Shown here piece by piece: positions 7,891 through 35,655 of a stretch of DNA of 64,000 nucleotides (its first letter is position 1; each line of letters starts with the position of its first letter). Where the stretch lies: positions 124,001-188,000 of the forward strand of contig CDROCS010000321.1 of assembly GCA_977020255.1 (NCBI GenBank). Direction: 5' to 3'. A program made the position numbers and the translations under genes. The notes beneath the pieces were generated by a model. It ran no database searches and was not told where the DNA came from. It saw only the letters and a program-made list of their open reading frames with translations. This DNA comes from Obrimoposthia wandeli (taxonomy: Eukaryota).

Positions 7891-8559
7891 ATGAATATGC
7901 ACGTAATGCCAGAAAAAATCATCATTGCTGATGATCACCCCCTTTTTCGCCAAGCATTGTTGATTGCCTTAAAAGAACAATTTAATACTACACAATGGCT
8001 TGAAGCCGAAACGGTTGAAAGCCTTAGTGATTGTTTAGTTAAAAATAACGATGTCGATTTGTTATTACTGGATCTTAATATTCCCGGTGCGCATGGCTTT
8101 GATCATCTCATTCGTATTCGTAAGCAATACCCAGACATTCCGGTTGTGGTTATCTCTGCTTACAGTGACGAGACCATTATAGGTAAAGCGATGCAGCACG
8201 GTGCATCAGGTTTTGTGCCCAAGTCAGAATCTGTGCCGACAATTATTACCGCTATCAATAAAGTATTATCTGGACAGTTGTGGGTACCAGGCTCGTTTGA
8301 AAAAGCGCAAGAAGCAGTGAGCAATGTTGCTGACGAGGCGATAGCTAAATTAACCGTACAAGAATATCGCATATTAATGATGTTTTCTGAAGGCCTGCTG
8401 AATAAACAAATTGGAGACAAACTTTGTGTTGCTGAGGCGACAGTCAAAGCCCATGCAAGCGCTATTTTTCGTAAATTGAATGTGCGTAATAGAACACAAG
8501 CTGCAATGATGTTGGGGCAACTCGATGTAGCGGATTACAGTGATAATTTAAAGGAATAA
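7891..8559 (+). CDS. crbR: LuxR/NarL-family response regulator, CrbR/ErdR-like
   Basis: IIIADDHPLFR, LLLLDLNIPG, GFVPKS and the HTH EGLLNKQI...TVKAHASAIFRKL; located in an acetate module next to a CrbS-like kinase. Confidence 0.75.
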   Translation: MNMHVMPEKIIIADDHPLFRQALLIALKEQFNTTQWLEAETVESLSDCLVKNNDVDLLLLDLNIPGAHGFDHLIRIRKQYPDIPVVVISAYSDETIIGKAMQHGASGFVPKSESVPTIITAINKVLSGQLWVPGSFEKAQEAVSNVADEAIAKLTVQEYRILMMFSEGLLNKQIGDKLCVAEATVKAHASAIFRKLNVRNRTQAAMMLGQLDVADYSDNLKE

Positions 8560-8563
8560 ATTA

Positions 8564-8995
8564 ATGAATAAGCATACTAAAGTTGCCGTACTGGTCGCGC
8601 CATTATTAGCCGTACTCGGTTATGTCGCCTCGGATTATTTTATTGAAAACGATGCGGATGAAATCAAATTAATCACCTTAGTACCTGAATCATCTTGTGC
8701 TGTACTTGACGGTGAATGCGTATTGATAAGCGGTGATTTCAAAATCAACGTATTTGATAAAGCAGGTATAACGGTTGTCAACTCGACTTTCCCGCTAGAT
8801 GAAGCCGTGTTGTTTTTGGTTAACGATGATAATTCTGCGACAGCATATCCTCTGACTCAAGTTCAAAGTAACTATTATTGGCAAGTGCAAACACCACTGC
8901 GTGAGTTAGCCGCGACCTCGGCAAGTTATAAATTAAGATTGATCGCTTCGATTAAAGGCGGTAATTACATCAGCGAATTTGAAACGTTGCTCTAG
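8564..8995 (+). CDS. Hypothetical membrane-anchored periplasmic protein (143 aa)
   Basis: One N-terminal hydrophobic helix and a Cys pair (SCAVLDGEC); 4 nt after the crbR stop and 19 nt before the crbS ATG. Confidence 0.7.
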   Translation: MNKHTKVAVLVAPLLAVLGYVASDYFIENDADEIKLITLVPESSCAVLDGECVLISGDFKINVFDKAGITVVNSTFPLDEAVLFLVNDDNSATAYPLTQVQSNYYWQVQTPLRELAATSASYKLRLIASIKGGNYISEFETLL

Positions 8996-9014
8996 TTTTT
9001 TAGTAGGTTATATT

Positions 9015-12000
9015 ATGTTCGCTAATTGGCAGTTAATGCTATTAAGTTTTTTTTATATCGCGTTATTGTTTTTGATTGCTTATTTAGGCGATAAATATCG
9101 TCATCTTATCCAAGGAAAACGGCAAGCGTTAATTTATGCGTTTGCCGTTTCTGTTTATTGTACCTCATGGAGTTTTCTCGGTACCACGGGGCAGGCTGCA
9201 ACCAGTGTTTACTCGTACTTGCCCATTTATTTAGGTCCTATCTTACTGCTTGTCTTCGCATGGCCTTTTCTACAACGTATTATTCAGACCAGTATCAGTT
9301 TTAATTTAACCTCTATCGCCGATTTACTTGCCGCTCGCTTTGGTAAATCACATGCCTTGGCTATCTTGGTGACGATGGTCTCGTTACTTGGCACCATGCC
9401 TTATATCGCCTTACAAATTAAAGCGATTGTTTATTCCTTCCAGCAATTACAAATCCAGCAAGACTTTATGCCATGGCAACTTGGTTTAGTGACCAGTTTT
9501 GTACTGGCTGGTTTTAGTATTCTATTTGGGATTCGAAATATTGATGTCACAGAACGTCATCCCGGTATTATGCTGGCGATTGCGTTTGAAGCCTTGGTTA
9601 AAATCATCGCTTTTGCCAGTGTCGGTATTTTCATTTGTTATATTGTCTTTGATTCACCACGGGATATCTGGCAACAAGCCAGTGCCAATGCTGACTTAGC
9701 CAGTGCATTGCAATTCCCCGATTTAAGTGCGATGTTTGGTATGATCATTATTGTGATGGCCGCATTTTTTGTGTTACCGCGGCAATTCCACGTCATGATT
9801 GTGGAGTTACGTGATGAACAAGATGCTTGGTTGAGCCGCCGTATTTTTCCCTTGTACCTACTTGTGTTTGCGTTTTTCTCTGCACCACTGGGGCTAGCGG
9901 GTTATTTACTACTCGGTAACAGCGTACCTGCGGATATGTATGTATTGGTGTTACCTTGGTATCAAGATCAAATGTGGTTAACACTGTTTGCATTTTTAGG
10001 CGCGATCTCAGCAGCAAGCTCTATGGTTATCGTTTCAACGATTGCCTTGAGTACCATGCTCAGTAATGAGATCGTATTCCCGTTTCTATTCAAGAAGAAT
10101 AAACATCCCACGCAATACCATGCGTTTAGATTAAAGCTGCTTAACATTCGTAAAGTGTTAGTGCTGTTTGTTATTTTTCTGAGTTATCTGGTCTTTCTGT
10201 TTATCCCTCCTACTGCATTAGCGAACTTAGGCGCGACTGCATTAGGCGCATTAGCACAACTCACGCCGGCATTAGTAGCGGCTTTCTATTGGCGTCGTGC
10301 GACATTAAAAGGGGTGTTTACAGGCATAAGTTTAGGATTTTCATTATGGACACTGGTTAATTTTTTACCGCAGTTAGGTTTATATCAAGGGCCACTCGAA
10401 GGCACTGTTTTTGCAAGTTCAACGGCAATCAACTTACTTTGCTTGACCATTAATATTGTCGCGATGATCCTAATATCCTTAGTTACCCGTTCGAGTATTC
10501 AAGAACGGATACAGGGGGCGTTGTTTTTAAAGCGCCAGTTAACGCCATCATTAGTGGAAAGTAAGCGCAAAGCGAAGTCAAAACGACAAGCGATATCCAT
10601 TGATGAGTTGCTGTTATTGACCGCGCAGTTTGTCGGTGACGATAAAGCATCTAAAAGCTTCCAGGCTTTTGAACAGGTAGCGATTACTTTAGGCTATACC
10701 GCTAAGGAAAAATCGGAATATGCACTTGAGCATGCCGAGAAAGTCTTATCGAGTGTGATGGGCTCGTCATCTGCACGCTTAGTGCTCAATTCGGCATTGG
10801 ATGGACATGATTTTGCGTTGGATGAACTGGCTACATTAGTCGGTAACGCATCAAGTCACCGCCAAGAATTTAGTCAGAATTTGTTAAAAAGTGCGATAGA
10901 AAATACCAGAGATGGGATCTCGATTGTAAATGATGAACTCGAACTGGTTGCTTGGAACAAGCAGTATGCGATGTTGTTTGATTATCCTGATGATATTCTG
11001 AGTGTGGGTTGTTCGGTTGAGTCATTAATACGCTTTAATGCCGAGCGCGGTTTGTGTGGTGCAGGTGATACTGAGTTTCATGTAAAAAAACGTCTCGATT
11101 TTCTACGTTTAAGACAGTCGCATAACTCCGAACGCTTACGTGAAGACGGTAAGGTTATTAGAATCGAAGGCAACCCATTACCTGATGGTGGCTTCTTGAT
11201 GGTTTTTTCCGATATTACCGTATTTAGACAAGCAGAGCAGGTATTAAAAGAAGCTAATCAAGATCTAGAAACCAGAGTTACTGAGCGCACCAATAAACTC
11301 GAAAAAGCCAATAAAGAGTTAGCCAAGGCGAGGGTAGTTGCAGATGAAGCGCTGAGTAAGAAAAGTCATTATTTACAAGTGTGTAGTCATGATTTATTGC
11401 AGCCACTAGAAGCGGCACGTTTGTTCACATCGGCACTGGCAAGTCAGTCGACGTTAAATGAACATCAGCAGCGCCAAGTGAAGAGTATCGACTTGTCGTT
11501 AAAAGTCGCGAATGAAATGATTGTTAATTTAGCCGAAGTTGCTCGTATTGAGAGTGGCAGTATTAAACCGCATATTGAAACATTCGCGCTAAATGATCTC
11601 TTTAGCCAACTTGCTAACGAGTTTTCTGCAGCAGCGAAACAACATGGGGTGAGTTTTACCATTATGCCGACAAAGCATTGGGTTAATACCGATAAACACC
11701 TGCTACGTCGCATATTACAAAATTTAATTGGTAATGCCTTTCGCTATGCCAGTCCTGGACGAGTATTGCTCGGTTGTCGCCGAAAAAGTGGTCAGATCAG
11801 TATTCAGTTATTAGATAATGGGCCCGGTATTGCGGCAAAAAATCAAGCTAAGGTATTCGAACAATTCAGTCAATTAGAGGACAATAATGGTTCGAATGAT
11901 GGCTTAGGGCTAGGACTTAGTATTTGTAATAGCCTATCGGTATTGCTGCAGCATCAATTGAGTCTTGATTCTATTGAAGGTCGAGGTTGTCGTTTTAGTC

Positions 12001-12455
12001 TACAACTGTGCGAGGCGACCGCGTTACAACAAGATAATATTGTACCGATTCTTGCTCCGACGGACCTGACAGGGACAGCTGTACTGTGTATCGATAACAA
12101 TCCGGCTATTTTGGAAGGCATGTTAGAGCTAATGAGCAGTTGGGACTGTGAGGTTTACGGTGCTAATTCAATCGCCACGGCGAAAGCATTATTTAAGCAG
12201 TGTGATTTCGATATTTTGTTAGTGGATTATCAATTAGATAATAGTGAGGATGGATTAACGTTAATTTCAGCGTTAAGAGCAATTAATCCCACTACGCCAG
12301 CAATCCTTATTACCGCGACGACTGAAGCTGGCATTGCAGATAAGGCCGCTGCGGCTAACGTCGGTTTATTACGTAAACTGGTTAAGCCTGCTGCGCTTAG
12401 AGCGATGATGAGTGCGCAATTAACTGAATCACTACAAACACAGTTTAGTCGCTAA
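9015..12455 (+). CDS. crbS: SLC5(SSS)-STAC-PAS hybrid sensor histidine kinase with REC domain, CrbS-like (start moved to ATG 9015)
   Basis: N-terminal SSS-like TM domain (VYCTSWSFLGTTG), PAS (WNKQYAMLFDYP), H-box SHDLLQPL, N-box NLIGNAFRY, DNGPGI, GLGLGLSI and a C-terminal REC. Confidence 0.85.
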   Translation: MFANWQLMLLSFFYIALLFLIAYLGDKYRHLIQGKRQALIYAFAVSVYCTSWSFLGTTGQAATSVYSYLPIYLGPILLLVFAWPFLQRIIQTSISFNLTSIADLLAARFGKSHALAILVTMVSLLGTMPYIALQIKAIVYSFQQLQIQQDFMPWQLGLVTSFVLAGFSILFGIRNIDVTERHPGIMLAIAFEALVKIIAFASVGIFICYIVFDSPRDIWQQASANADLASALQFPDLSAMFGMIIIVMAAFFVLPRQFHVMIVELRDEQDAWLSRRIFPLYLLVFAFFSAPLGLAGYLLLGNSVPADMYVLVLPWYQDQMWLTLFAFLGAISAASSMVIVSTIALSTMLSNEIVFPFLFKKNKHPTQYHAFRLKLLNIRKVLVLFVIFLSYLVFLFIPPTALANLGATALGALAQLTPALVAAFYWRRATLKGVFTGISLGFSLWTLVNFLPQLGLYQGPLEGTVFASSTAINLLCLTINIVAMILISLVTRSSIQERIQGALFLKRQLTPSLVESKRKAKSKRQAISIDELLLLTAQFVGDDKASKSFQAFEQVAITLGYTAKEKSEYALEHAEKVLSSVMGSSSARLVLNSALDGHDFALDELATLVGNASSHRQEFSQNLLKSAIENTRDGISIVNDELELVAWNKQYAMLFDYPDDILSVGCSVESLIRFNAERGLCGAGDTEFHVKKRLDFLRLRQSHNSERLREDGKVIRIEGNPLPDGGFLMVFSDITVFRQAEQVLKEANQDLETRVTERTNKLEKANKELAKARVVADEALSKKSHYLQVCSHDLLQPLEAARLFTSALASQSTLNEHQQRQVKSIDLSLKVANEMIVNLAEVARIESGSIKPHIETFALNDLFSQLANEFSAAAKQHGVSFTIMPTKHWVNTDKHLLRRILQNLIGNAFRYASPGRVLLGCRRKSGQISIQLLDNGPGIAAKNQAKVFEQFSQLEDNNGSNDGLGLGLSICNSLSVLLQHQLSLDSIEGRGCRFSLQLCEATALQQDNIVPILAPTDLTGTAVLCIDNNPAILEGMLELMSSWDCEVYGANSIATAKALFKQCDFDILLVDYQLDNSEDGLTLISALRAINPTTPAILITATTEAGIADKAAAANVGLLRKLVKPAALRAMMSAQLTESLQTQFSR

Positions 12456-24045: not shown

Positions 24046-24381
24046 ATGGACATATTACGACCTCATGACGGAATCATAATTTTACCTATCGCTACAGACC
24101 TCGATACCGAGCACGTAGTTAGTATTCAGCCTAGCTTAGAGGCGTTGGTTGATGATCATGCTGAAAACATTATCTTAGATTTTACTCATGTTACTTTTAT
24201 TGACTCAACGGGTATTGGCGCTATTGTTTTTTTGTTCAAAAGACTCACTTCACAACGTCGTACTCTTTCTCTTCTTAAAGTCTCAGGCCAACCGCATAAA
24301 TTGATGACGATGTTACGAGTCGAAAACGCAATCCCTTTTATTGAAGACATTCCTGAATCTACTGCAGGTCACTCGGCATAA
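24046..24381 (+). CDS. STAS-domain anti-sigma-factor antagonist, SypA-like (start moved to ATG 24046 after AGGAG)
   Basis: IILDFTHVTFIDSTGIGAIVFLFKRL with the phosphorylatable Ser at position 54; first gene of a syp-like operon. Confidence 0.9.
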   Translation: MDILRPHDGIIILPIATDLDTEHVVSIQPSLEALVDDHAENIILDFTHVTFIDSTGIGAIVFLFKRLTSQRRTLSLLKVSGQPHKLMTMLRVENAIPFIEDIPESTAGHSA

Positions 24382-24403: not shown

Positions 24404-25537
24404 ATGAATAGATTATTGCTATGGACAGCTATATGTATTTTCCTTTCTGGTTGCACAAACTGGCCTAGTGTTGGCTACTTTGAGAATACAACAATCCATA
24501 CTGAAGAAAGAATTCAATTTAAACAACATTATGACTATTTGAATTTACATTTTTCAGTAGCTAATCTACGCGGTGCACAAACGTGTACACCTGCCTACGT
24601 AAAAACGGTTGAAAATATTAATAGTCGTGTTGAGAAAGCCATTGCCGTTGAAGACCCGCGAGATGTGAAAATAGAAATCGCCATTCTAGAAAAAAACATC
24701 ACCAACTTAATTCTGCACCTCAATCGAGTCACGAGTAACACTAATTGTGCTCAACCACCACGTTTAGTCACGTCTAATTTTGTTCACCCGTTAATTTATC
24801 AGCTCGATCTCTTACTGTACTGTGCACCACAATTTGAAAAAGGTAATGCTACTTTGACTGAAGAGTACAAAGTGTGTCTTCGCCAAGTAAGCTTTTTGCT
24901 GTTAGATAATCCAGAAATTATAATTGAATACACTAAATACAGATTGTTTGAAAATAGCATTAGTGCAAAAAAATCACAATCAAATATCAATTACACCAAC
25001 AATATAGTGACTCATAATGTCACGACCATTGTTGATAAAGAAAGTGAAAATTTAGCGGTTACAGTTAATCAAAATGATGAAGATTATAATGACATCATGC
25101 GCCAATATTTACTCTTTGAACAAGTGCCTGGCGTGAGTGTGCAGCAAATTTCTCGATTACAGTTAGACCTAGATCAAGTGCATAACCCCGTTCAAATTCA
25201 TGAGATAGCTGCAACAGACGCGCGTCAGAATCAACCTCAGTTATCTACAGTCGATGATTATGCGACAAGCCTAAAGGATGTTGAGTTACTTAATTTACGT
25301 ACAGATGTGATCTTGGATTATGTTTTGAACATCACTGCTGACCCACTACGTCACAAGGTTATCTATGAAGACTTACGACTCAGTTCTGTCACTTCAATAA
25401 CGCCAGTGATTAGCACGTTATTGTGGCAATCAAAGCATAATCAAGATGTCGACCATAAAGTAAAAAATTGGCGGTTTTTGTTGAACGAAGACGAGCTTTT
25501 TTCCGATGCGTCACTGCCAAAAGGAGTCGCATTATGA
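24404..25537 (+). CDS. Lipoprotein with a degenerate, interrupted OmpA-like domain, SypB-like
   Basis: Lipobox LSGC; FEKGNATLTEEYKVCLRQVSFLLLDNPEI resembles the start of an OmpA-C domain; occupies the sypB position in the operon. Confidence 0.6.
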   Translation: MNRLLLWTAICIFLSGCTNWPSVGYFENTTIHTEERIQFKQHYDYLNLHFSVANLRGAQTCTPAYVKTVENINSRVEKAIAVEDPRDVKIEIAILEKNITNLILHLNRVTSNTNCAQPPRLVTSNFVHPLIYQLDLLLYCAPQFEKGNATLTEEYKVCLRQVSFLLLDNPEIIIEYTKYRLFENSISAKKSQSNINYTNNIVTHNVTTIVDKESENLAVTVNQNDEDYNDIMRQYLLFEQVPGVSVQQISRLQLDLDQVHNPVQIHEIAATDARQNQPQLSTVDDYATSLKDVELLNLRTDVILDYVLNITADPLRHKVIYEDLRLSSVTSITPVISTLLWQSKHNQDVDHKVKNWRFLLNEDELFSDASLPKGVAL

Positions 25538-27654
25538 AATTTTCATTACTGTGTTGTACTTTCTGTTTAACACTGTGTTTTACTTTGATATCAACGTCGT
25601 CAATAGCTTATGCAGAAAGCGATCTTGTTGATTCTGGCGACCAACTGTTTATTTTTATGCCAGGTGAAAGCGATTTCGAAGAACCGTTTCAAGTTGATGC
25701 AAGTGGTTACATTCAAATACCTGAAATAGGGCGGATACAAGTCAAAGGTAAAACCCTAGCGGCAGTACTTAAAGAATTAAAAACCGCATTGAGTGTGGTG
25801 TTTCGTGATATATCGAAACTGTACATTGAGTTTAGAGCGCGCGAGAAGTTAGTGACCGTATTAGGCTATGTTAATGATCCACATGAAGTTGTACTGCCTG
25901 AATTTGGTAATGTACAGATGGCATTGAATAAAGCTGGCGGCATGCTTGCAGGCGCTCAACTGGACAATATGCAATTGCAACGAGGCGCTAAAGTGATCAT
26001 TTTCGACTTTAAGCGTTACTTGGAAACGGGTGATGACAACGTATTGCCAGTGCTTAGATCGGGCGATGTTATTTTTGTGCCTTCATCGCCGCTTACTGGC
26101 AATGTACAAATGACTTTTGATGCGACAACGTTAAAATCGGGCGGTGATGCAAGTGATACCCAAAAAGCGGTGACTGTTTTTGGTGAGGTTAATGCACCAG
26201 GCACGTTCTCTTATGTACCGGGTATGACGGTGATAGAAAGTTTAATGAAGGCTAATGGCGTTACCCGTTATGGTAATGTAAGTAAGATTCGAGTCATGGG
26301 GTTAAAAGAGCCACAAACATTCGATTTAAAGCTTTACCTAGATACCGGTGATGTTTCTGAATTACCGATAATACGACCAGGCACGACTATTTTTGTACCG
26401 ATTCAAGTTGCAGATATCAAAGTGGGCCTACAAGTTGTTTATGTCATGGGGCAAGTGAATAAACCAGGTGCTTATGAAGGCCGGGAAGGCATTACGTTTA
26501 TGGATATGCTTGCCAATGCCGGTGGTCCTAATCGATATGCTGATACGCAACAAATCCGCGTGTTGAAAGTGTCTGGTGACACAATCCAGTTTAATTTAAA
26601 GAAATATACCGATGATCCTGTAAATAACCCTTATCCTAAAATCACCGGTGGCGATGTCATTTTCTTACCCGAAAAAGCCGATATGATTGAGAAATCCTGG
26701 TTAATTGAAGCGCATAACGAGGCCATTAAAATCATCGGTGCAGTGAAGAATCCAGGCCGCTATCAATGGGACGATGATATGACATTCCTTGATTTGTTAG
26801 GGCATGCCGAAGGACCGACTGAAAAAGCCGATTTAGCCAAAATAATTATCGTTGGTAACGATGGTTTAGGTGAGCGGCAGTCTTTTGATTTAGAAAAATT
26901 CATGAAAGAGGGTGGTGATTATTTAATACTACCGCAGTTATCTGCTGGTGATACTGTGATGTTCAACGAACTACCTGATGATCCAACAGACAATAAATCT
27001 AAATGGATTAAGCAAGAATCTGAGTCTTCAATTTATATACTTGGTGCGGTTGGATCACCAGGGCGTTATGCTTTTAATAGCCGATTAGACTTTTTAGACT
27101 TATTATCTGCTGCTGATGGGCCGACGAATGAAGCTGATATCAAACACATTAAAGTCACTCATCGTAATAGACGTTATGCGAAAACCTCCACCCTTGATCT
27201 CGATATGTACTTTGAGACGGGTGATGAAAGTCTGTTACCGCAAATACTACCTGGTGATACCATTTACATTCCAGCGAAGACAGATCAAGGGATATTGAAC
27301 AATACCGCTAATATCGTTCAAGTATTAGGAGCTGTTCACAACCCTGGGCGTTACAAATATGATTCCTCATTGGATGTGGTGGGTATATTAACAATGGCTG
27401 GAGGGCCAACGTCAGAGGCTTACATTGACCGTATTGTCATCGTGACTAAACGTGGTGAAATGGAACACACTGCAAGGTCGTTCAACATGAAGCATTATTT
27501 TACCCAACCAGACTATCGCGATATACCGATTATACATGCGGGGGATACCATTTATGTACCTAACGAAAAAGACTCAAACTGGAGCCAGCTAATGGATATA
27601 TTAGGCAGTGCACTGAGTATCGTAACACTCTTTATTGTCGGCTCTTCCCTATGA
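25534..27654 (+). CDS. Polysaccharide export protein with Poly_export and six SLBB repeats, SypC/Wza-like (start moved to ATG 25534, ATGA overlap)
   Basis: Signal peptide (AYA-ES), VDASGYIQIPEIGRI, six V-x-V/I-x-G-x-V-x-x-P repeats and a C-terminal amphipathic helix. Confidence 0.9.
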   Translation: MKFSLLCCTFCLTLCFTLISTSSIAYAESDLVDSGDQLFIFMPGESDFEEPFQVDASGYIQIPEIGRIQVKGKTLAAVLKELKTALSVVFRDISKLYIEFRAREKLVTVLGYVNDPHEVVLPEFGNVQMALNKAGGMLAGAQLDNMQLQRGAKVIIFDFKRYLETGDDNVLPVLRSGDVIFVPSSPLTGNVQMTFDATTLKSGGDASDTQKAVTVFGEVNAPGTFSYVPGMTVIESLMKANGVTRYGNVSKIRVMGLKEPQTFDLKLYLDTGDVSELPIIRPGTTIFVPIQVADIKVGLQVVYVMGQVNKPGAYEGREGITFMDMLANAGGPNRYADTQQIRVLKVSGDTIQFNLKKYTDDPVNNPYPKITGGDVIFLPEKADMIEKSWLIEAHNEAIKIIGAVKNPGRYQWDDDMTFLDLLGHAEGPTEKADLAKIIIVGNDGLGERQSFDLEKFMKEGGDYLILPQLSAGDTVMFNELPDDPTDNKSKWIKQESESSIYILGAVGSPGRYAFNSRLDFLDLLSAADGPTNEADIKHIKVTHRNRRYAKTSTLDLDMYFETGDESLLPQILPGDTIYIPAKTDQGILNNTANIVQVLGAVHNPGRYKYDSSLDVVGILTMAGGPTSEAYIDRIVIVTKRGEMEHTARSFNMKHYFTQPDYRDIPIIHAGDTIYVPNEKDSNWSQLMDILGSALSIVTLFIVGSSL

Positions 27655-28370
27655 ATATATTACCGGAAACATTTATAGAAATAGACCAAATTTATCAGCT
27701 AATTATGAATGAAAATATTAAGTCGTTAGCGATCAACTGCGCTCAAGGAGGGGAAGGTACTACTGAGTTGGTTTTAGCGCTTGCTCGGCGTCATAAAGCG
27801 GCTGGAAGTCGAGTCCTTATTGTAGATCTCAATACATTCAAACCAGCAATCACCAATGAATATGTTCAGGAAAAGCAGTCATGGTCTCTTGATGATACTG
27901 ATTTACAAACCGCCTCCATGACTCAATTTTCTGAAATGATTGATATTTTACCTGCCCCACAAGGTGAGCAAGATCAAAATATTAGCTTCCGAGACGAAAA
28001 GAAGATCAAAAATGCGATCGACTTTTGGTTACAACACTATAATTTTATTATATTTGATACATGTGCAATTACGCTAACAAATTTTTCAAACATACCAGGT
28101 GAAGTGATTGCTAGGGGTTGTGATGCCAGTTTACTTATTATCGCACCCGGTATTTCACTCGAGAGTCGGGTATTAAAGACACTCGAGATGCTTAAGCAGA
28201 ATAATGTGACATTACTTGGCACTGTTATTAATGATGTTAAGTGCCCACCGCTCGATATGCAACTTAGAAACTCAGTACGTAGACGACTCAAGCGCTTACC
28301 GATACTGAAGCAATGGTTACTTAATCGAATTTCGAATATTGAATTATTAAAAGGAAGAATCGGCCGTTGA
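27651..28370 (+). CDS. Wzc/CapB-like P-loop protein (chain-length/tyrosine-kinase domain), SypD-like
   Basis: Deviant Walker A GGEGTT, A' LIVDLN, Walker B IIFDT and LLGTVIND; no TM segments. Confidence 0.8.
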   Translation: MNILPETFIEIDQIYQLIMNENIKSLAINCAQGGEGTTELVLALARRHKAAGSRVLIVDLNTFKPAITNEYVQEKQSWSLDDTDLQTASMTQFSEMIDILPAPQGEQDQNISFRDEKKIKNAIDFWLQHYNFIIFDTCAITLTNFSNIPGEVIARGCDASLLIIAPGISLESRVLKTLEMLKQNNVTLLGTVINDVKCPPLDMQLRNSVRRRLKRLPILKQWLLNRISNIELLKGRIGR

Positions 28371-29857
28371 TGAAAACACAACTTTTTGCCAAGCAATATC
28401 CGCTAAAACTTGATTCAATCAGTGAGGTTCGACGTTTACTGACTACTTTATGTCATCAGTTAGCGCTTGAACAAGCTGAAATAGATCGGGTCACAATAGT
28501 ATTGGCTGAATATTTGTCTAATTTGTATTTTCATAATTCCGACGCTGTTCACTGGTTTAGTATTGAACTGGCTGGTAGAAATGCTGATTGGTATTTTGCA
28601 GTGTTCGATAATGGTGATACTTTCAATCCCTATGACGTTGATACTAAAGATATATTTAATGGCGAGTTACTAACTGGTGGTATGGGGTTAGCGTTAATTC
28701 AAAAAAATAATCCTGATGGTTGTTATGTCAGTGAAAATGGCATTAATAAATTAACTTGCCCATTGAGGAAGCTGGAAAAAAAGCTAAACGTTGTCATTGT
28801 TGATGATGATCGTATTTTATTATCTGCGTATCATGCTTATCTTAAAAATGATTTTGTCGTACACATTTTTTCTGATGCATCTTTAGCGCTTAAATTTATT
28901 GCTCACGAAGGTTGTGATCTTATTATTGCCGACATACACATGCCTGAGATGTCTGGATTTGAATTCAGAAAAAAGGTTGAAGACCTTGATAAGGGCGCAT
29001 TAACACCGTTCGTATTCTTAACTGGCGATGAGAATTTATCGGTGCAAGAACAAGCTGCAGAAGTGTCTATTGACGGTTACTTAATTAAACCTATTACCAA
29101 AACATCATTACTCGCTGTTTGTAACCGGGTAATACGCAGAACTAACCAGTTAGCGCTACATTATCAACAACGAATAGTAGAGTCTCTGAGCAGACCGTTT
29201 AAGCCTTCACTACCTGCAAGTTGTAGACACTGGAATTTTGCGTTAGCACATACACCTGCGACTGAAGGAGGTGGTGACTTTGCATTTTTTCATGATTTTG
29301 GAGAGAGTCAAATTATCGTTTTGGGCGATATTATGGGGCATGGGCCTGTTGCTAAATTTCATAGTTTTGCCATCATGGGGTATTTGGAAGGGGTTGTAAC
29401 GTCGGCAGAAACATCCCCCTCGACCTTGCTTGCTGGATTATCCAATAGACTCTTTTCAAATCAGTTGTTAGAAACCAGTATGCTCACCTGTATGGTGATC
29501 AAACTGACCGATAACCAATGTGAAATCGCCACTGCAGGTCATCCTCAACCTTACTTATTGCAAGATTCTGGTTATCAAGCCATTGACTGCAAAGGAACCG
29601 TATTAGGCTTGTTACCTGATGAGCAATATTCATCGGTGATTCTGCAATTAACACCAGAGGATAAGATTTTTTGTTATTCAGACGGCATTTTTGAAAATAT
29701 TGACCGCCATTGTGACTGTATTGATAATATACTTGTTGATATCAAAGGGAAAACAGCTCAAAGTACGTTAGATAAACTGTGGTTGCGGTTTGAATCACTA
29801 TCGCCTGAACAGTTACAAGATGATGTCACTGCGCTTATTATAGATTTCAATATTTAA
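28367..29857 (+). CDS. Tri-domain partner-switching regulator: RsbW-like Ser kinase, REC and PP2C/SpoIIE phosphatase, SypE-like
   Basis: Kinase: EYLSN(52), DNG, GGMGL. REC: VDDD, D189, FLT, IKP. PP2C: GGGDF, GDIMGHG, SDG, QDD. Alternative ATG start at 28370. Confidence 0.92.
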   Translation: MMKTQLFAKQYPLKLDSISEVRRLLTTLCHQLALEQAEIDRVTIVLAEYLSNLYFHNSDAVHWFSIELAGRNADWYFAVFDNGDTFNPYDVDTKDIFNGELLTGGMGLALIQKNNPDGCYVSENGINKLTCPLRKLEKKLNVVIVDDDRILLSAYHAYLKNDFVVHIFSDASLALKFIAHEGCDLIIADIHMPEMSGFEFRKKVEDLDKGALTPFVFLTGDENLSVQEQAAEVSIDGYLIKPITKTSLLAVCNRVIRRTNQLALHYQQRIVESLSRPFKPSLPASCRHWNFALAHTPATEGGGDFAFFHDFGESQIIVLGDIMGHGPVAKFHSFAIMGYLEGVVTSAETSPSTLLAGLSNRLFSNQLLETSMLTCMVIKLTDNQCEIATAGHPQPYLLQDSGYQAIDCKGTVLGLLPDEQYSSVILQLTPEDKIFCYSDGIFENIDRHCDCIDNILVDIKGKTAQSTLDKLWLRFESLSPEQLQDDVTALIIDFNI

Positions 29858-29914: not shown

Positions 29915-30259
29915 ATGGAAAACACAGTTATAAATGAAACGGTATTCACGCAATTATTGGTTGATGTCGGAGACGAAATGTTACCGGCATTAGTTGAAGT
30001 TTTTAATGAAGAAACAACAGAGCGGATTTCAGACCTACAAGCTCTAATGGCTAATCTCGACAATGATAAAGTTGCGCAGAACTGTCACAGTATAAAAAGT
30101 AGTGCAGGAACGTATGGGGCGTTAATTGTGCAGCAACATGCTGAGGAGTTGGAAGTGATGGCAAAATCAAATAACACGGCTGACGTTCAAGTGAAATTAC
30201 CATTATTAATAAAAAGTTTAGAAGATGCGATTAGTGCGCTGACGTTAAAATGTGATTAA
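29915..30259 (+). CDS. Stand-alone Hpt phosphotransfer protein, LuxU-like
   Basis: 114 aa; CHSIKSSAGTYGA with His58; convergent with yvcK. Confidence 0.9.
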   Translation: MENTVINETVFTQLLVDVGDEMLPALVEVFNEETTERISDLQALMANLDNDKVAQNCHSIKSSAGTYGALIVQQHAEELEVMAKSNNTADVQVKLPLLIKSLEDAISALTLKCD

Positions 30260-31142
30260 CGACAGATTCGATTGCTGCTTTTAACTTTTGTCTATCGTGA
30301 TAGTTTTTATTTTCATCTTCACGTAAATCATGGGAGTAGGTCGGATAAGTTAAGTCAGATTGTTTATCTATATCCTGTATCACTGCATTAATCAGCGGAA
30401 AGCCAAGCGTATCCTCGCACCATTGTAAGCGTTCTTGCAGTGGAATCGTTGATGCTGGCCCCATCTCATGCTGTAAGTTACCTAAGTAAATTACTTTTGC
30501 GTTGGTTCTACGTAAAGCTTTTTGTATATCTTTAAGCAGAAGTGGTGGCATGATACTGGTTAGGAATGAACCTGGACCTAATAGTATAAGTTCTGCTTTT
30601 TCAATTGCCTCTACAGCTTCAAGTGTCGCTGAGACATTTGGTTGAACTGTTAATTGATTTGGAAACTCATGCATCTTATCGACAGATACTTCGCCGTGTA
30701 CATCACTGCCACAAGGCGTTACTGCAATTAAGTCACTAGGCTGTTCTGACATCGGAATCAGCTGGCATTCGACGTGTAACATATTACGAATAAGATTTAC
30801 CGCATCTAACGGGCGCACACAAAGATTATCTAATGCCACAAGCATGAGATTACCTAAGTTATGATTCTTCAGCTCACCTTCATTTTGAAAGCGATATTCA
30901 AACAATAAAGAGCCAATGTCTGGTTGAGTGACTAACTGATTTATACAATTTCGAATATCACCCCAAGCAATACAATTCTCAGAATTTCTTAGCCGACCTG
31001 TTGAACCACCATTGTCGGTTGTTGTTACAATACCCGTTAATCTTGGCCCTAAAAAGGAAAGTGAAGACAGCACTCGTCCGAGTCCATGACCACCGCCAAT
31101 AGCGACAACTTTATTAAGATCTGAAAGTGATTTTTGCAACAT
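30231..31142 (-). CDS. yvcK: YvcK/YbhK (CofD-related, UDP-GlcNAc-binding) family protein
   Basis: VVAIGGGHGL, TTTDNGGSTGRLR, HNLGNL and GPGSFLTSI motifs; start taken at ATG 31142. Confidence 0.95.
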   Translation of the reverse strand: MLQKSLSDLNKVVAIGGGHGLGRVLSSLSFLGPRLTGIVTTTDNGGSTGRLRNSENCIAWGDIRNCINQLVTQPDIGSLLFEYRFQNEGELKNHNLGNLMLVALDNLCVRPLDAVNLIRNMLHVECQLIPMSEQPSDLIAVTPCGSDVHGEVSVDKMHEFPNQLTVQPNVSATLEAVEAIEKAELILLGPGSFLTSIMPPLLLKDIQKALRRTNAKVIYLGNLQHEMGPASTIPLQERLQWCEDTLGFPLINAVIQDIDKQSDLTYPTYSHDLREDENKNYHDRQKLKAAIESVVNHILTSAH

Positions 31143-31294: not shown

Positions 31295-31876
31295 TTATAT
31301 GGGCATTAACTCTTTAAGTATTGCAACAGTGCTATTGCAATCAGGCTGTTGCAATAAAAGTTGTTTTTCTGAGACTGAAAGTGGTAATAGTTCTATCCAA
31401 CGTTGTGAAACCCAACTTATATTGGCCATTTCTTTTAATGTATAAAGTTGATTTATATCTGCGTGTTGGACATATATTTCTTCTAATTTTTCAGCTAAAT
31501 AATATTCTTTTGGGGTTATTTTTTGATCGGGCCAGTTGCTGATGTAGTGGACGTTAGCCTTTTTTAAACCATCAGACTCAGTGGTTATATCGTCGATAAT
31601 AAAACGCCGACTACCTTCAACATTAATGCCAAGAAAACCATCATCTAGGGTATAAAAATCAATAATTTCAACGTGAGTGCCAATCGATGATATACGTCCA
31701 AAGGGTCCGTTTTGGTTAGGGTCGATCATGACAACACCAAATCCACTCATTGCTTTAGTACTTTCTTTGATCATCCGAATATAGCGTTCTTCTATGATGC
31801 GTAAAGGTAGTCTACCATGAGGTAAAATATGGGATGTTAATGGCAGTAATGCGAGTTGGGTAGTTTGCAAGAGCAA
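31295..31876 (-). CDS. LON peptidase substrate-binding (N-terminal) domain protein, stand-alone
   Basis: LALLPL...ILPHGRLPLRIIEERYIRM, FGVV, GINVEGSRRF and KQLLL motifs; no protease domain. Confidence 0.88.
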   Translation of the reverse strand: MLLQTTQLALLPLTSHILPHGRLPLRIIEERYIRMIKESTKAMSGFGVVMIDPNQNGPFGRISSIGTHVEIIDFYTLDDGFLGINVEGSRRFIIDDITTESDGLKKANVHYISNWPDQKITPKEYYLAEKLEEIYVQHADINQLYTLKEMANISWVSQRWIELLPLSVSEKQLLLQQPDCNSTVAILKELMPI

Positions 31877-34552: not shown

Positions 34553-34680
34553 AAACTCCGATCCTTAATGATCTAAATTTATAAATTTAAATATGATATT
34601 AAGGACTCATAGCATTCGAAATTGCTATAAGGGTTTAATCAGAAATGATTAGGCCTCCCGTATTTGGAAAGGTGTTTATG
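34553..34680 (+). ncRNA. Moco (molybdenum cofactor) riboswitch / RNA motif in the moaA leader
   Basis: The 3' part GAAATGATTAGGCCTCCCGTATTTGGAAAGGTGTTTATG is nearly identical to the E. coli moaA leader as I recall it. Stems TCCTTAAT/ATTAAGGA and ATAGCA/TGCTAT are visible, and 5' AAACTCC pairs over the RBS. Confidence 0.88.
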
Positions 34681-35655
34681 CAACTTCAAGATCAGTTTTC
34701 GCGTAAATTTTATTATTTACGCCTATCAATTACAGACGTCTGTAATTTCAAATGTAACTATTGCTTACCAGATGGCTATAAAGCCGACGGTAAACCTGAA
34801 TTTTTAGGGCGTGACGAATTACGTCGTATTGTTACCGGGTTTGCTGAAATGGGCACTGAAAAAGTCCGTATTACTGGTGGTGAACCTTCATTAAGAAAAG
34901 ACTTCACGGATATCATCTCAGACATCGCTGCGATCCCTAAAATTAATAAGGTCGCGACAACCACTAACGGTTTTAATCTAGAAAAGTATGCGCAACAATG
35001 GCGTGATGCTGGACTTGATGCAATAAATGTCAGTATCGACAGTTTAGATGCTCGCATGTTTCGCCAGATTACCGGTAAGAATATGTTCCACAAAGTGATG
35101 GCCGGTCTAGATGCCGCTTTTACTGCTGGATTTGAAACCGTTAAAGTCAATACGGTATTGATGCGCAATTTAAATGATATTGAATTAGATGATTTTTTAA
35201 ATTGGATCAAAACCAGACCCATTCAATTACGTTTTATTGAGTTAATGCAGACTGGTGATAATCAGGCATTGTTTGATAAACACCACGTATCCGGTGCAAG
35301 TATTCGTGACAAGTTGATATTACAAGGTTGGGTAAGTAAAGTCAGAGGTAAGGCCGATGGGCCTGCGCAAGTCTTTATTCATCCTGACTATGTTGGTGAA
35401 ATTGGCTTGATTATGCCTTATGAGAAGAACTTTTGTTCGACTTGTAACCGTTTACGTGTATCCACTAAAGGGCGCTTACATCTGTGTTTATTTGGTGAGG
35501 CGGGTGTTGAGTTACGTGATCTAGTGCAAGATGATAATCAACAGCAAGCATTGATAAATCGGGTTGTTGAGCATATGTCAGATAAAAAATCGACTCATTT
35601 CCTACAAGATGGTTTCACCGCGAATACACCTCATTTAGCATCAATTGGTGGTTAA
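34678..35655 (+). CDS. moaA: GTP 3',8-cyclase (start moved to ATG 34678)
   Basis: Radical [18 protein letters not shown]-terminal FCSTCNRLR...LCL and a terminal IGG. Confidence 0.98.

What the first reader, a model, noticed from the sequence alone, without database searches (positions are those of the whole stretch)
29915..31142. LuxU look-alike at the luxU genomic address, with a SypE-type regulator where luxO should be
Seen: a 114-aa Hpt with His58 in CHSIKSSAGTYGA, convergent with yvcK, with moaA a few genes further on. Established: V. harveyi LuxU is 114 aa with His58 (SHALKSSAASFGA), and Vibrio genomes carry luxO-luxU convergent with yvcK, followed by moaA-E. LuxU also promotes syp biofilm formation in A. 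fischeri. Inference: this may be a true luxU orthologue whose upstream partner is the partner-switch enzyme rather than the sigma-54 activator LuxO. That would suggest either an ancestral biofilm role for LuxU before its recruitment to quorum sensing, or replacement of luxO by the syp block.
Basis: partly seen in the sequence, partly recalled or inferred. Interest (0 to 1): 0.85.

Follow-up and report, generated by a model that had tools for sequence, protein, structure and literature searches.

The report
LuxU-type phosphorelay gene wired to SypE
In the marine bacterium Moritella, the small phosphate-passing protein that sits where Vibrio keeps its quorum-sensing relay LuxU follows a biofilm partner-switch regulator (SypE) instead of LuxO, a natural rewiring between the quorum-sensing and biofilm circuits.

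Summary
Window 29915-30259 (+) encodes a 114-aa stand-alone Hpt with His58. Its 3' end overlaps convergent yvcK by 29 bp, and it lies 57 bp after a SypE-type regulator (kinase-REC-PP2C) that closes a sypABCDE-like block.

The window is a Moritella contig (99% to M. dasanensis) inside a 1.35-Gb mixed assembly. The layout is the same in all 11 Moritella genomes checked.

The tail-to-tail Hpt/yvcK junction is shared with:
- Vibrionaceae, as uvrB-luxO-luxU/yvcK/moaA;
- Aeromonas, where the Hpt also has no luxO next door.

This makes the gene the positional counterpart of luxU. Sequence agrees but does not prove it:
- LuxU is its best curated family (47 bits, cut-off 140), but A. fischeri's own LuxU also fails that cut-off (101 bits).
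- SypF-Hpt domains score lower (18-35 bits).
- The Hpt tree is an unresolved polytomy.

Each of four Moritella genomes searched has one LuxO/SypG-family activator, unlinked and beside a SypK-like flippase. None has a second LuxU or a recognisable Qrr.

Most likely the Hpt is the cell's single phosphorelay hub, feeding SypE-REC and that activator. This is a new variant of a known kind. Pseudomonas HptB-HsbR-HsbA is a mechanistic precedent. Interest is moderate.

The scan's note s1-250207, on this same window, covers the syp block.

The parts
29915..30259 (+). Stand-alone Hpt of the LuxU type, 114 aa with His58. It is the only stand-alone Hpt in M. dasanensis.
   Evidence: The AF2 model has pLDDT 92.7 and a helical-bundle fold.
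28367..29857 (+). SypE-type partner-switch response regulator: an RsbW-like kinase domain, a REC domain (Asp189) and a PP2C phosphatase domain.
   Evidence: Pfam hits. The full-length alignment to ES114 SypE conserves N52, D189, K241 and the PP2C aspartates.
24046..24381 (+). SypA-like STAS protein, the presumed substrate of SypE. Its Ser54 is equivalent to SypA Ser56.
   Evidence: STAS domain at 64 bits. The DSxG motif is invariant in the alignment with ES114 SypA.
24404..28370 (+). SypB-like gene (no Pfam match), SypC-like Wza/SLBB exporter, and SypD-like ATPase related to tyrosine kinases.
   Evidence: The same genes occur in the same order in Vibrionaceae syp loci.
30231..31142 (-). yvcK (CofD-related), convergent with the Hpt. 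The two 3' ends overlap by 29 bp (30231-30259).
31295..31876 (-). Gene for a LON N-terminal domain protein. It is also found next to yvcK in Aeromonas and on contig C1674.
32026..34384 (-). narL/narP-like response regulator and narX/narQ-like sensor kinase. This is a conserved right-hand flank shared with Aeromonas.
34645..35655 (+). moaA.

Best explanation
The gene is Moritella's copy of the LuxU-type stand-alone histidine phosphotransfer protein. It has kept the ancestral position, tail-to-tail with yvcK. Its upstream neighbour, probably in the same operon, is a SypE-type partner-switch regulator rather than LuxO.

Proposed mechanism (inferred):
1. Hybrid sensor kinases that lack their own Hpt domain phosphorylate His58. 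Candidates in M. dasanensis are the H-NOX-associated kinase and BinK-like kinases.
2. The Hpt passes the phosphoryl group to Asp189 of the SypE receiver domain. This sets the balance between SypE's kinase and PP2C activities on Ser54 of the STAS protein SypA, and so gates polysaccharide and biofilm output.
3. The Hpt probably also feeds the genome's single LuxO/SypG-family sigma-54 activator, which is encoded elsewhere beside a SypK-like flippase.

Shown here: gene identity, domain content, catalytic residues, conserved synteny, and the Hpt being the only stand-alone Hpt. Inferred: every phosphotransfer step and the biofilm output.
For: Position:
- The Hpt and yvcK are tail-to-tail, either overlapping by 12-39 bp or separated by less than 45 bp. 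This holds in most Vibrionaceae loci, A. fischeri ES114, contig C1674, Aeromonas and all Moritella genomes.
- The Moritella layout sucCD-sypABCDE-Hpt/yvcK/lonN/narLX/moaA is found in 11/11 genomes.

Sequence:
- The best NCBIfam model is LuxU, at 46.9 bits over positions 3-102 of 110.
- On the same model, genuine ES114 LuxU scores 100.7, Celerinatantimonas 65, Aeromonas 52-58 and Psychromonas 44. SypF-Hpt domains score 18-35 and prefer the TorS model.
- Against group HMMs built without Moritella, the Hpt scores 84 bits (luxO-adjacent Celerinatantimonas type), 78 (Aeromonas yvcK-adjacent type), 46 (Vibrio LuxU) and 41 (SypF).
- A profile of Moritella, Aeromonas and Celerinatantimonas sequences hits V. 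harveyi LuxU at 61 bits and HptB at 40 bits.

Uniqueness:
- There is one LuxU-model hit per Moritella genome.
- It is the only stand-alone Hpt among the 7 Hpt domains of M. dasanensis.

Partners:
- sypE ends 57 bp upstream on the same strand, with no terminator-like site between.
- SypE and SypA keep their catalytic and acceptor residues.
- An H-NOX gene with an Hpt-less hybrid kinase is present.
- BinK orthologues in M. dasanensis and M. marina are reported in PMC5019070.
- There is a single LuxO/SypG-family activator (645-651 bits, next best 377), beside a GT4 gene and a SypK-like flippase.

Predicted binding:
- Complex prediction on SypE-REC plus Hpt gave weak support: score 0.59, best control 0.00.
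- The mark was reached by 51 of 78 solved complexes and 2 of 108 mismatched pairs.
- At 0.60 or under, it was reached by only 5 of those 78 solved complexes and by all 4 mismatches that passed.
- The runs agree in at least 97% of contacts, and the partner's pLDDT is at least 88.

Precedent:
- In V. fischeri, LuxU feeds SypG and is suspected of acting on SypE. The SypF Hpt domain alone was used to complement a sypF deletion there (PMC12369376).
Against: - The curated LuxU cut-off is missed by a wide margin (46.9 against 140).
- The Hpt ML tree is a polytomy. AU tests do not reject a clade of Moritella with SypF-Hpt (p 0.27), with Vibrio LuxU (p 0.095) or with Aeromonas (p 0.23).
- The slot directly after sypE is exactly where sypF lies in Vibrionaceae. 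Aliivibrio sifiae naturally has an Hpt-only SypF there.
- No expression data were found.
- The complex prediction is weak and may reflect solved Hpt-REC complexes remembered by the model.
- Co-transcription is not shown. Promoter-like sites lie inside the 3' end of sypE.
Confidence: 0.58

Rival explanations
1. The Hpt is a remnant of SypF. On this view a syp block carrying sypA-F landed next to yvcK, and sypF was later reduced to its C-terminal Hpt domain. The luxU-like address would then be a coincidence.
For: - The gene occupies the sypF slot immediately after sypE.
- Hpt-only 'short SypF' genes (237-247 aa) exist between sypE and sypG in Aliivibrio sifiae and relatives.
- The AU test does not reject a Moritella + SypF clade (p 0.27).
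- The SypF Hpt domain alone was used to complement a sypF deletion in V. fischeri (PMC12369376).
Against: - The SypF-group HMM gives 41 bits, against 78-84 for LuxU-type Hpts that are not linked to syp.
- SypF-Hpt domains score 18-35 on the LuxU model and prefer TorS. The Moritella protein scores 47 and prefers LuxO's partner model, LuxU.
- The ML tree places SypF Hpts in a clade (92/91 support) that excludes Moritella.
- The tight tail-to-tail junction with yvcK, and the lonN/narLX/moaA flank, are shared with Aeromonas and Vibrio, where no syp genes are present.
- The protein has no N-terminal remnant. The short SypF proteins keep about 120 extra residues.
Confidence: 0.15
2. The Hpt is an ordinary LuxU that serves only a LuxO-type quorum-sensing or global regulatory pathway. 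On this view its adjacency to sypE is a rearrangement scar with no functional link.
For: - A LuxO/SypG-family activator exists in every Moritella genome searched.
- Aeromonas shows that the luxU-type gene can sit next to unrelated housekeeping genes (GATase_4, NIF3).
- Promoter-like sites upstream of the Hpt could give it independent transcription.
Against: - The sypE-Hpt adjacency, with a 57-bp gap, is conserved across Moritella species whose Hpt and SypE proteins are only about 76-90% identical to those of the window.
- SypE has a receiver domain that needs a phosphodonor, and this is the only stand-alone Hpt.
- No Qrr hit reaches the gathering score; the best is 28 bits against 50.
- LuxU already cross-talks to the Syp pathway in V. 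fischeri (PMC12369376).
Confidence: 0.2
3. The Hpt is generic, HptB-like or of another kind, and has no specific relation to LuxU.
For: - As a single sequence, it hits LuxU (26.5 bits) and P. aeruginosa HptB (25.8 bits) almost equally.
- The predicted fold matches many Hpt proteins equally well.
Against: - Its family profile prefers LuxU (61 bits) over HptB (40 bits).
- The best curated family is LuxU.
- The synteny with luxU loci is conserved.
Confidence: 0.05

Closest known systems
LuxU of Vibrionaceae (V. harveyi PDB 1y6d; A. fischeri ES114 LuxU; NCBIfam NF041948)
   Same: - A stand-alone protein of about 114 aa with a helical-bundle Hpt fold and the phospho-acceptor His at position 58.
- Encoded tail-to-tail with yvcK, with moaA nearby.
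- LuxU is its best curated family match.
- In V. fischeri, LuxU also feeds the Syp pathway (PMC12369376).
   Different: - It scores only 47 bits against a cut-off of 140, and shares about 29% identity with a LuxU from this assembly.
- It is not preceded by luxO or uvrB.
- No Qrr was recognised in Moritella.
- Its upstream neighbour is SypE.
Aeromonas stand-alone Hpt next to yvcK, referred to as the LuxU homologue in the Aeromonas literature (PMC5247445)
   Same: - The same yvcK/lonN/narLX/moaA neighbourhood.
- No luxO next door, while a LuxO-like activator (663-667 bits) is encoded elsewhere.
- The Aeromonas group HMM gives the Moritella protein 78 bits.
   Different: - Aeromonas has housekeeping genes upstream, and a FIST protein plus an Hpt-less hybrid kinase beside yvcK.
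- Moritella has no FIST gene and has the sypA-E block upstream.
SypF Hpt domain of A. fischeri ES114, and the Hpt-only short SypF of Aliivibrio sifiae
   Same: - Encoded directly after sypE.
- It serves, or here would serve, as phosphodonor to SypE and SypG.
- It belongs to the same broad LuxU/SypF-like group of Hpt domains.
   Different: - SypF is a 766-1025-aa hybrid kinase, or a 237-aa protein with an N-terminal extension, and is followed by sypG.
- The sequence profile match is weaker (41 bits).
- It is not next to yvcK.
HptB-HsbR-HsbA of Pseudomonas aeruginosa (PMC6482189)
   Same: Here too a stand-alone Hpt collects input from several hybrid kinases and phosphorylates a response regulator. 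That regulator carries PP2C and anti-sigma-type kinase domains, which set the phosphorylation of a STAS protein. The output is a biofilm/motility switch.
   Different: - The domain order differs: HsbR is REC-PP2C-kinase, and the regulator here is kinase-REC-PP2C.
- The Hpt family differs: the profile gives LuxU 61 bits and HptB 40 bits.
- Here the module is embedded in polysaccharide export genes.

Membership tests
Pfam Hpt (PF01627) | Profile match above the gathering score, with a conserved phospho-acceptor His | tested here: met
   40.3 bits against a cut-off of 24.6. His58 lies in an HSxKSSA motif that is invariant across relatives.
LuxU (NF041948 equivalog) | Score at or above the curated cut-off of 140 bits | tested here: not met
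   46.9 bits. The experimentally studied A. fischeri ES114 LuxU also fails at 100.7 bits, so this cut-off defines Vibrio sensu stricto and not the wider orthologue group.
LuxU (NF041948 equivalog) | Stand-alone protein of about 110-120 aa with a helical bundle and His near position 58 | tested here: met
   114 aa with His58. The AF2 model has pLDDT 92.7 and five helices, with TM 0.76-0.81 to solved Hpt proteins.
LuxU (NF041948 equivalog) | Encoded immediately downstream of luxO | tested here: not met
   The upstream gene is SypE-type. The only LuxO/SypG-family gene lies on another contig.
LuxU (NF041948 equivalog) | Convergent, tail-to-tail with yvcK (positional orthology) | tested here: met
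   The overlap here is 29 bp. In most Vibrionaceae loci it is 12-15 bp, on C1674 it is 39 bp, and in Aeromonas it ranges from a 21-bp overlap to a 41-bp gap.
LuxU (NF041948 equivalog) | Groups with LuxU in a phylogeny | tested here: inconclusive
   The backbone is a polytomy. AU p is 0.095 for Moritella + Vibrio LuxU, 0.27 with SypF and 0.23 with Aeromonas.
LuxU (NF041948 equivalog) | Relays phosphate from the quorum-sensing receptors LuxN/LuxQ/CqsS to LuxO, controlling Qrr sRNAs | tested here: inconclusive
   No Qrr hit reaches the gathering score in 4 Moritella genomes; the best is 28 bits against 50, and the model is Vibrio-centred. The receptors were not searched. The biochemistry is not testable here.
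SypF Hpt domain | C-terminal domain of a hybrid kinase encoded between sypE and sypG | tested here: not met
   The protein is stand-alone at 114 aa, and the next gene is yvcK, not sypG. Hpt-only SypF variants do exist in A. sifiae.
SypF Hpt domain | Closest sequence relatives are SypF Hpt domains | tested here: not met
   The SypF HMM gives 41 bits against 78-84 for LuxU-type groups. The SypF clade (92/91 support) excludes Moritella. The AU test does not reject the alternative.
SypE (upstream partner) | RsbW-like kinase, REC and PP2C domains in that order, with the catalytic Asn, the acceptor Asp and the PP2C Asp residues | tested here: met
   Pfam domains. N52, D189, K241, D304, D321, D439 and D485/486 are invariant with ES114 SypE.
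HptB-HsbR-HsbA type module | Stand-alone Hpt clustered with a partner-switch response regulator and a STAS protein | tested here: met
   The gene content is analogous (PMC6482189). The domain order and the Hpt family differ. This is a working analogy, not membership.

The most novel reading that the evidence does not exclude
Moritella may preserve, or have reverted to, a minimal circuit. In it, one LuxU-type Hpt and one LuxO/SypG-type activator control a Syp-like partner switch and polysaccharide genes, with no Qrr/HapR quorum-sensing branch. If so, the LuxU/LuxO pair was originally a biofilm and polysaccharide phosphorelay. The Vibrionaceae SypF-Hpt/SypG pair and the quorum-sensing LuxU/LuxO pair would then be specialised duplicates of that one module.
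Probability: 0.2. Interest if true: 0.7.

Novelty: new variant of a known kind. Interest (0 to 1): 0.45.

Why it matters
Work in V. fischeri has repeatedly found cross-talk between the LuxU/LuxO quorum-sensing relay and the SypF/SypE/SypG biofilm relay. A 2025 paper speculates that LuxU can act on SypE directly. Moritella offers a natural genome where the LuxU-position Hpt is physically joined to sypE. It is also the only stand-alone Hpt there, alongside one LuxO/SypG-type activator. That makes the proposed LuxU-to-SypE transfer directly testable in a simpler background. It also gives comparative data on how the two relays diverged. Finally, it shows that luxO-luxU linkage is not a reliable marker of LuxU orthologues outside Vibrionaceae, and that the NCBIfam LuxU cut-off misses even A. 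fischeri LuxU.

Tried and rejected
- **Hpt phylogeny.** An ML tree of 62 Hpt domains gave well-supported groups but an unresolved backbone. AU tests rejected none of three placements, and a fourth test did not finish.
- **Activator phylogeny.** A tree of LuxO/SypG-family activators recovered a strong superclade. The Moritella branch could not be assigned to LuxO or to SypG.
- **Fold search.** The AF2 model against the PDB returned only generic Hpt matches, with no E-value at or below 0.001 and LuxU not near the top. This does not discriminate.
- **Sigma-54 promoters.** No -24/-12 motif was found upstream of sypA or near the Moritella activator. A genome-wide count of a stricter -24/-12 motif was no higher than the control.
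- **Qrr.** The Rfam model found nothing above 28 bits in 4 Moritella genomes. This is weak negative evidence because the model is Vibrio-based.
- **FIST domain.** FIST accompanies the Hpt in Aeromonas and Celerinatantimonas but is absent from 3 Moritella genomes.
- **RNA evidence.** No RNA sequencing run holds the stretch.
- **luxOU elsewhere in the assembly.** Searching the assembly itself for luxOU is confounded. Contig C1674 carries genuine luxO-luxU, but its YvcK is only 57% identical to the window's, so it belongs to another organism.
- **SypE in a first Vibrio sample.** A search of 17 Vibrionaceae genomes found only REC-PP2C proteins. A wider sample then found full-length SypE in 80 of 201 genomes.
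Full report
**What is there.** Window 29915-30259 (+) is an ORF of 114 codons whose product has His at position 58 in CHSIKSSAGTYGA.
- It matches Pfam Hpt at 40.3 bits, above the cut-off of 24.6.
- AlphaFold2 gives a confident all-helical bundle (pLDDT 92.7) that superposes on solved Hpt proteins at TM 0.76-0.81.
- A GAGG ribosome-binding site precedes the ATG.
- The ORF begins 57 bp after the stop of the upstream gene, on the same strand, with no terminator-like site between them.
- Its last 29 bp overlap the 3' end of the convergent gene 30231-31142, which is YvcK (TIGR01826, 318 bits).
- Further right lie a LON-N-domain gene, narL/narX-like genes, moaA and napFDABC.
- To the left lies a five-gene block placed directly after sucABCD. 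It comprises a STAS protein, a 377-aa protein with no Pfam match, a Wza/SLBB exporter, a ParA/BY-kinase-like ATPase, and a 496-aa protein with HATPase_c_2, REC and PP2C domains.
- The 496-aa protein aligns end to end with SypE of Aliivibrio fischeri ES114 at about 30% identity. It keeps Asn52 (kinase), Asp189 and Lys241 (receiver) and the PP2C aspartates. The STAS protein keeps the Ser of the DSxG motif, Ser54 here and Ser56 in ES114 SypA.

**Which organism.** The assembly holding the window is 1.35 Gb in 6912 contigs and contains several bacteria.
- The Hpt is 99% identical to that of Moritella dasanensis ArB 0140. All close homologues come from Moritella.
- A second Moritella is present on contigs C1101 and C506.
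- An unrelated bacterium is present on contig C1674. It carries ruvAB-uvrB-luxO-luxU/yvcK/lonN, with LuxO at 882 bits (cut-off 800) and LuxU at 90 bits.
- The YvcK of C1674 is only 57% identical to the window's, so C1674 is not part of the window's genome.
- Genome-wide questions were therefore asked of Moritella reference genomes.

**Synteny.** I fetched about 16 kb around LuxU-model hits in a sample of 301 genomes of the same GTDB order. I annotated them against reference proteins from the window and from C1674. Taxa were then named by exact protein look-ups.
- *Vibrionaceae.* The order is uvrB-luxO-luxU, convergent yvcK, then moaA.
- *Moritella.* The order is sucCD-sypABCDE-Hpt, convergent yvcK, lonN, narL, narX, moaA. 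It holds in 11 of 11 genomes, although the Hpt and SypE proteins diverge to about 76-90% identity.
- *Aeromonas.* The order is a housekeeping gene (GATase_4 or NIF3), the Hpt, convergent yvcK, a FIST protein plus an Hpt-less hybrid kinase, then lonN, narL, narX, moaA. This was seen in 12 genomes.
- *Celerinatantimonas, Psychromonas and a Shewanella.* These have a LuxO-like gene followed by the Hpt, but away from yvcK.
- *The junction.* The Hpt/yvcK junction is tight wherever it occurs: a 12-39 bp overlap or a gap under 45 bp in all but three Vibrionaceae loci.
- This junction, shared across at least three families and combined with variable left flanks, is the strongest evidence that the Moritella gene is the positional orthologue of luxU.
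- It also shows that losing the luxO neighbour is not peculiar to Moritella. Aeromonas has a LuxO-like activator (663-667 bits) about 0.5 Mb from its Hpt.

**Sequence evidence.** The best curated family for the Moritella Hpt is LuxU (NF041948), at 46.9 bits over model positions 3-102 of 110. This is far below the 140-bit cut-off.
- That cut-off is very strict. The genuine LuxU of A. fischeri ES114 scores only 100.7.
- Other scores on the same model:

| Protein | Bits on NF041948 |
|---|---|
| C1674 LuxU | 90 |
| Celerinatantimonas Hpt | 65 |
| Aeromonas Hpt | 52-58 |
| Psychromonas Hpt | 44 |
| SypF Hpt, ES114 | 20 |
| Short SypF, A. sifiae | 18 |
| SypF Hpt, Enterovibrio | 35 |

- The Aliivibrio SypF Hpt domains prefer the TorS model over LuxU, and the Enterovibrio domain scores about equally on both.
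- Against group HMMs built without Moritella, the Moritella proteins score 84 bits (Celerinatantimonas type), 78 (Aeromonas type), 46 (Vibrio LuxU) and 41 (SypF). Moritella's own ArcB, BarA and other Hpt domains score about 12 bits against the Moritella-Hpt HMM and at most about 21 against any group HMM.
- A profile of Moritella, Aeromonas and Celerinatantimonas sequences finds V. harveyi LuxU as the clear best solved structure (61 bits), ahead of P. aeruginosa HptB (40 bits).
- The single Moritella sequence does not separate the two: LuxU 26.5 bits, HptB 25.8 bits.
- An ML tree of 62 Hpt domains recovers each group with good support. SypF Hpts form a clade (92/91 support) that excludes Moritella. 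The backbone is a polytomy.
- AU tests reject none of Moritella + SypF (p 0.27), Moritella + Vibrio LuxU (p 0.095) or Moritella + Aeromonas (p 0.23).
- Phylogeny is therefore inconclusive. Profile similarity and synteny both favour the LuxU type over SypF.

**The rest of the circuit in Moritella.**
- Each Moritella genome has exactly one hit to the LuxU model, and it is this gene.
- In M. dasanensis it is the only stand-alone Hpt among seven Hpt domains.
- Each of the four Moritella reference genomes searched has one protein that scores 645-651 bits on the LuxO model. The cut-off is 800 and the next activator scores 377.
- A 98%-identical copy of that activator is present in this assembly on contig C2849.
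- In trees it falls in a strongly supported LuxO/SypG superclade (100/99) as its own branch, resolved to neither LuxO nor SypG.
- Its upstream neighbours are a GT4 glycosyltransferase and a flippase homologous to ES114 SypK (26% identity over 450 residues, E 1e-44).
- No Qrr was found above 28 bits, against a gathering score of 50.
- M. dasanensis also encodes an H-NOX protein followed by an Hpt-less hybrid kinase. This is the HqsK/HahK arrangement, which signals through LuxU in V. harveyi and through SypF and LuxU in V. fischeri (PMC12369376).
- BinK orthologues were reported in M. dasanensis and M. marina (PMC5019070).
- The window itself holds a CrbS-like Hpt-less hybrid kinase.

**Mechanism proposed.** The Hpt most likely acts as the single relay between Hpt-less hybrid kinases and two receivers.
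- The first receiver is SypE, whose gene lies immediately upstream. Phosphorylation of its Asp189 would switch it between phosphorylating and dephosphorylating SypA.
- The second is the unlinked LuxO/SypG-type activator.
- This corresponds to what the SypF Hpt domain does in V. fischeri, where LuxU itself can drive SypG-dependent biofilm and is suspected of acting on SypE (PMC12369376).
- SypG is LuxO's closest paralogue (PMC10162802).
- The general design has a worked-out precedent in Pseudomonas HptB-HsbR-HsbA (PMC6482189): a stand-alone Hpt, a response regulator with PP2C and anti-sigma-kinase domains, and a STAS substrate.
- A structure-based test of SypE-REC with the Hpt gave only weak support: score 0.59, best control 0.00.
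  - The mark was reached by 51 of 78 solved complexes and 2 of 108 mismatches.
  - Scores of 0.60 or less were reached by only 5 of those 78 solved complexes and by all 4 mismatches that passed.
  - The runs agree in at least 97% of contacts, and the partner's pLDDT is at least 88.
  - It may simply reflect solved Hpt-REC complexes.
- All phosphotransfer steps are inferred.

**Rivals.**
- *A SypF remnant.* This fits the position after sypE and the natural Hpt-only SypF of A. sifiae. It fits the sequence profiles and the shared yvcK junction less well.
- *An ordinary LuxU with only accidental adjacency to sypE.* This cannot be excluded without experiments. The adjacency is, however, conserved across the genus, and SypE needs a phosphodonor.
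- *A generic or HptB-type Hpt.* This is disfavoured by the family profile and by synteny.

luxO-luxU adjacency occurs in Vibrionaceae, C1674, Celerinatantimonas, Psychromonas and a Shewanella.
- 'Ancestral biofilm role' remains possible but untested.
- The arrangement is a new variant of known kinds (LuxU-family relay, SypE partner switch, HptB-like logic). It is not a new kind of system.
- I found no paper describing it in Moritella.

Noticed in passing
G000 contig C1674 (L042 1-10000): A different bacterium in the same assembly carries ruvAB-uvrB-luxO-luxU/yvcK/lonN, with LuxO above the curated cut-off (882 bits). None of four of its proteins looked up (RuvB, UvrB, LuxO, LuxU) has an exact match in the 15-billion-protein collection. 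It may be an unsequenced Vibrionaceae-like associate of the host.
   Followed up: partly
L169 8539-9252, L170 8506-9234, L174 8506-9249 (L169 is Aliivibrio sifiae by exact look-up; L170 and L174 are related genomes that were not named): Between sypE and sypG these genomes encode a 237-247-aa protein with only an Hpt domain and an N-terminal extension. A full-length SypF hybrid kinase is absent. This is a natural 'SypF-Hpt only' variant.
   Followed up: partly
L175, L176, L177, L179, L180 (Vibrionaceae): Several Vibrionaceae genomes have a compact sypABCDE block with no sypF or sypG next to it, as Moritella does. The SypE receiver in these genomes must be fed by an Hpt encoded elsewhere.
   Followed up: no
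L103-L118 (Aeromonas); L097, L098, L100, L102, L109 (L097 and L109 are Celerinatantimonas by exact look-up; the others group with them): Outside Vibrio, the LuxU-type Hpt is regularly accompanied by a FIST-domain protein (confirmed by Pfam only in Aeromonas L112) plus an Hpt-less hybrid kinase. In Aeromonas the pair is divergent from yvcK. In Celerinatantimonas it lies in a luxO-like/Hpt/FIST/kinase row. This pair is a likely conserved input to the relay and is absent from Moritella.
   Followed up: partly
L194 1471-1827 (A. fischeri ES114 luxU): The experimentally studied LuxU of A. fischeri scores 100.7 bits on NCBIfam NF041948, below its 140-bit cut-off. Automatic annotation will therefore call it, and all non-Vibrio orthologues, only 'Hpt domain-containing protein'.
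   Followed up: yes
L193 2044-4354 (M. dasanensis G001 contig C4): An H-NOX gene is followed by a 586-aa hybrid kinase (HisKA-HATPase-REC, no Hpt). This is the HnoX/HqsK-HahK arrangement known to signal through LuxU or SypF in vibrios. H-NOX was found in only one of three Moritella genomes searched.
   Followed up: partly
L064 7074-11284 (M. dasanensis); G000 contig C2849 20900-22405: Moritella's single LuxO/SypG-family sigma-54 activator sits after a GT4 glycosyltransferase and a SypK-like flippase. In the activator tree, SypG is weakly sister (68/88) to the Aeromonas LuxO-like proteins and not to Vibrio LuxO.
   Followed up: partly
window 7891-12455: A REC-GerE response regulator, a 143-aa ORF and a 1158-aa PAS_7-HisKA-HATPase-REC hybrid kinase without an Hpt form a CrbR/CrbS-like set. 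An SSF symporter and a DUF294 nucleotidyltransferase lie nearby.
   Followed up: no
window 24404-25537: The gene in the SypB position encodes 377 aa with no Pfam or NCBIfam match. It is only 20-25% identical to the SypB of Vibrionaceae, and it is the least conserved gene of the block within Moritella (63-83% identity).
   Followed up: no
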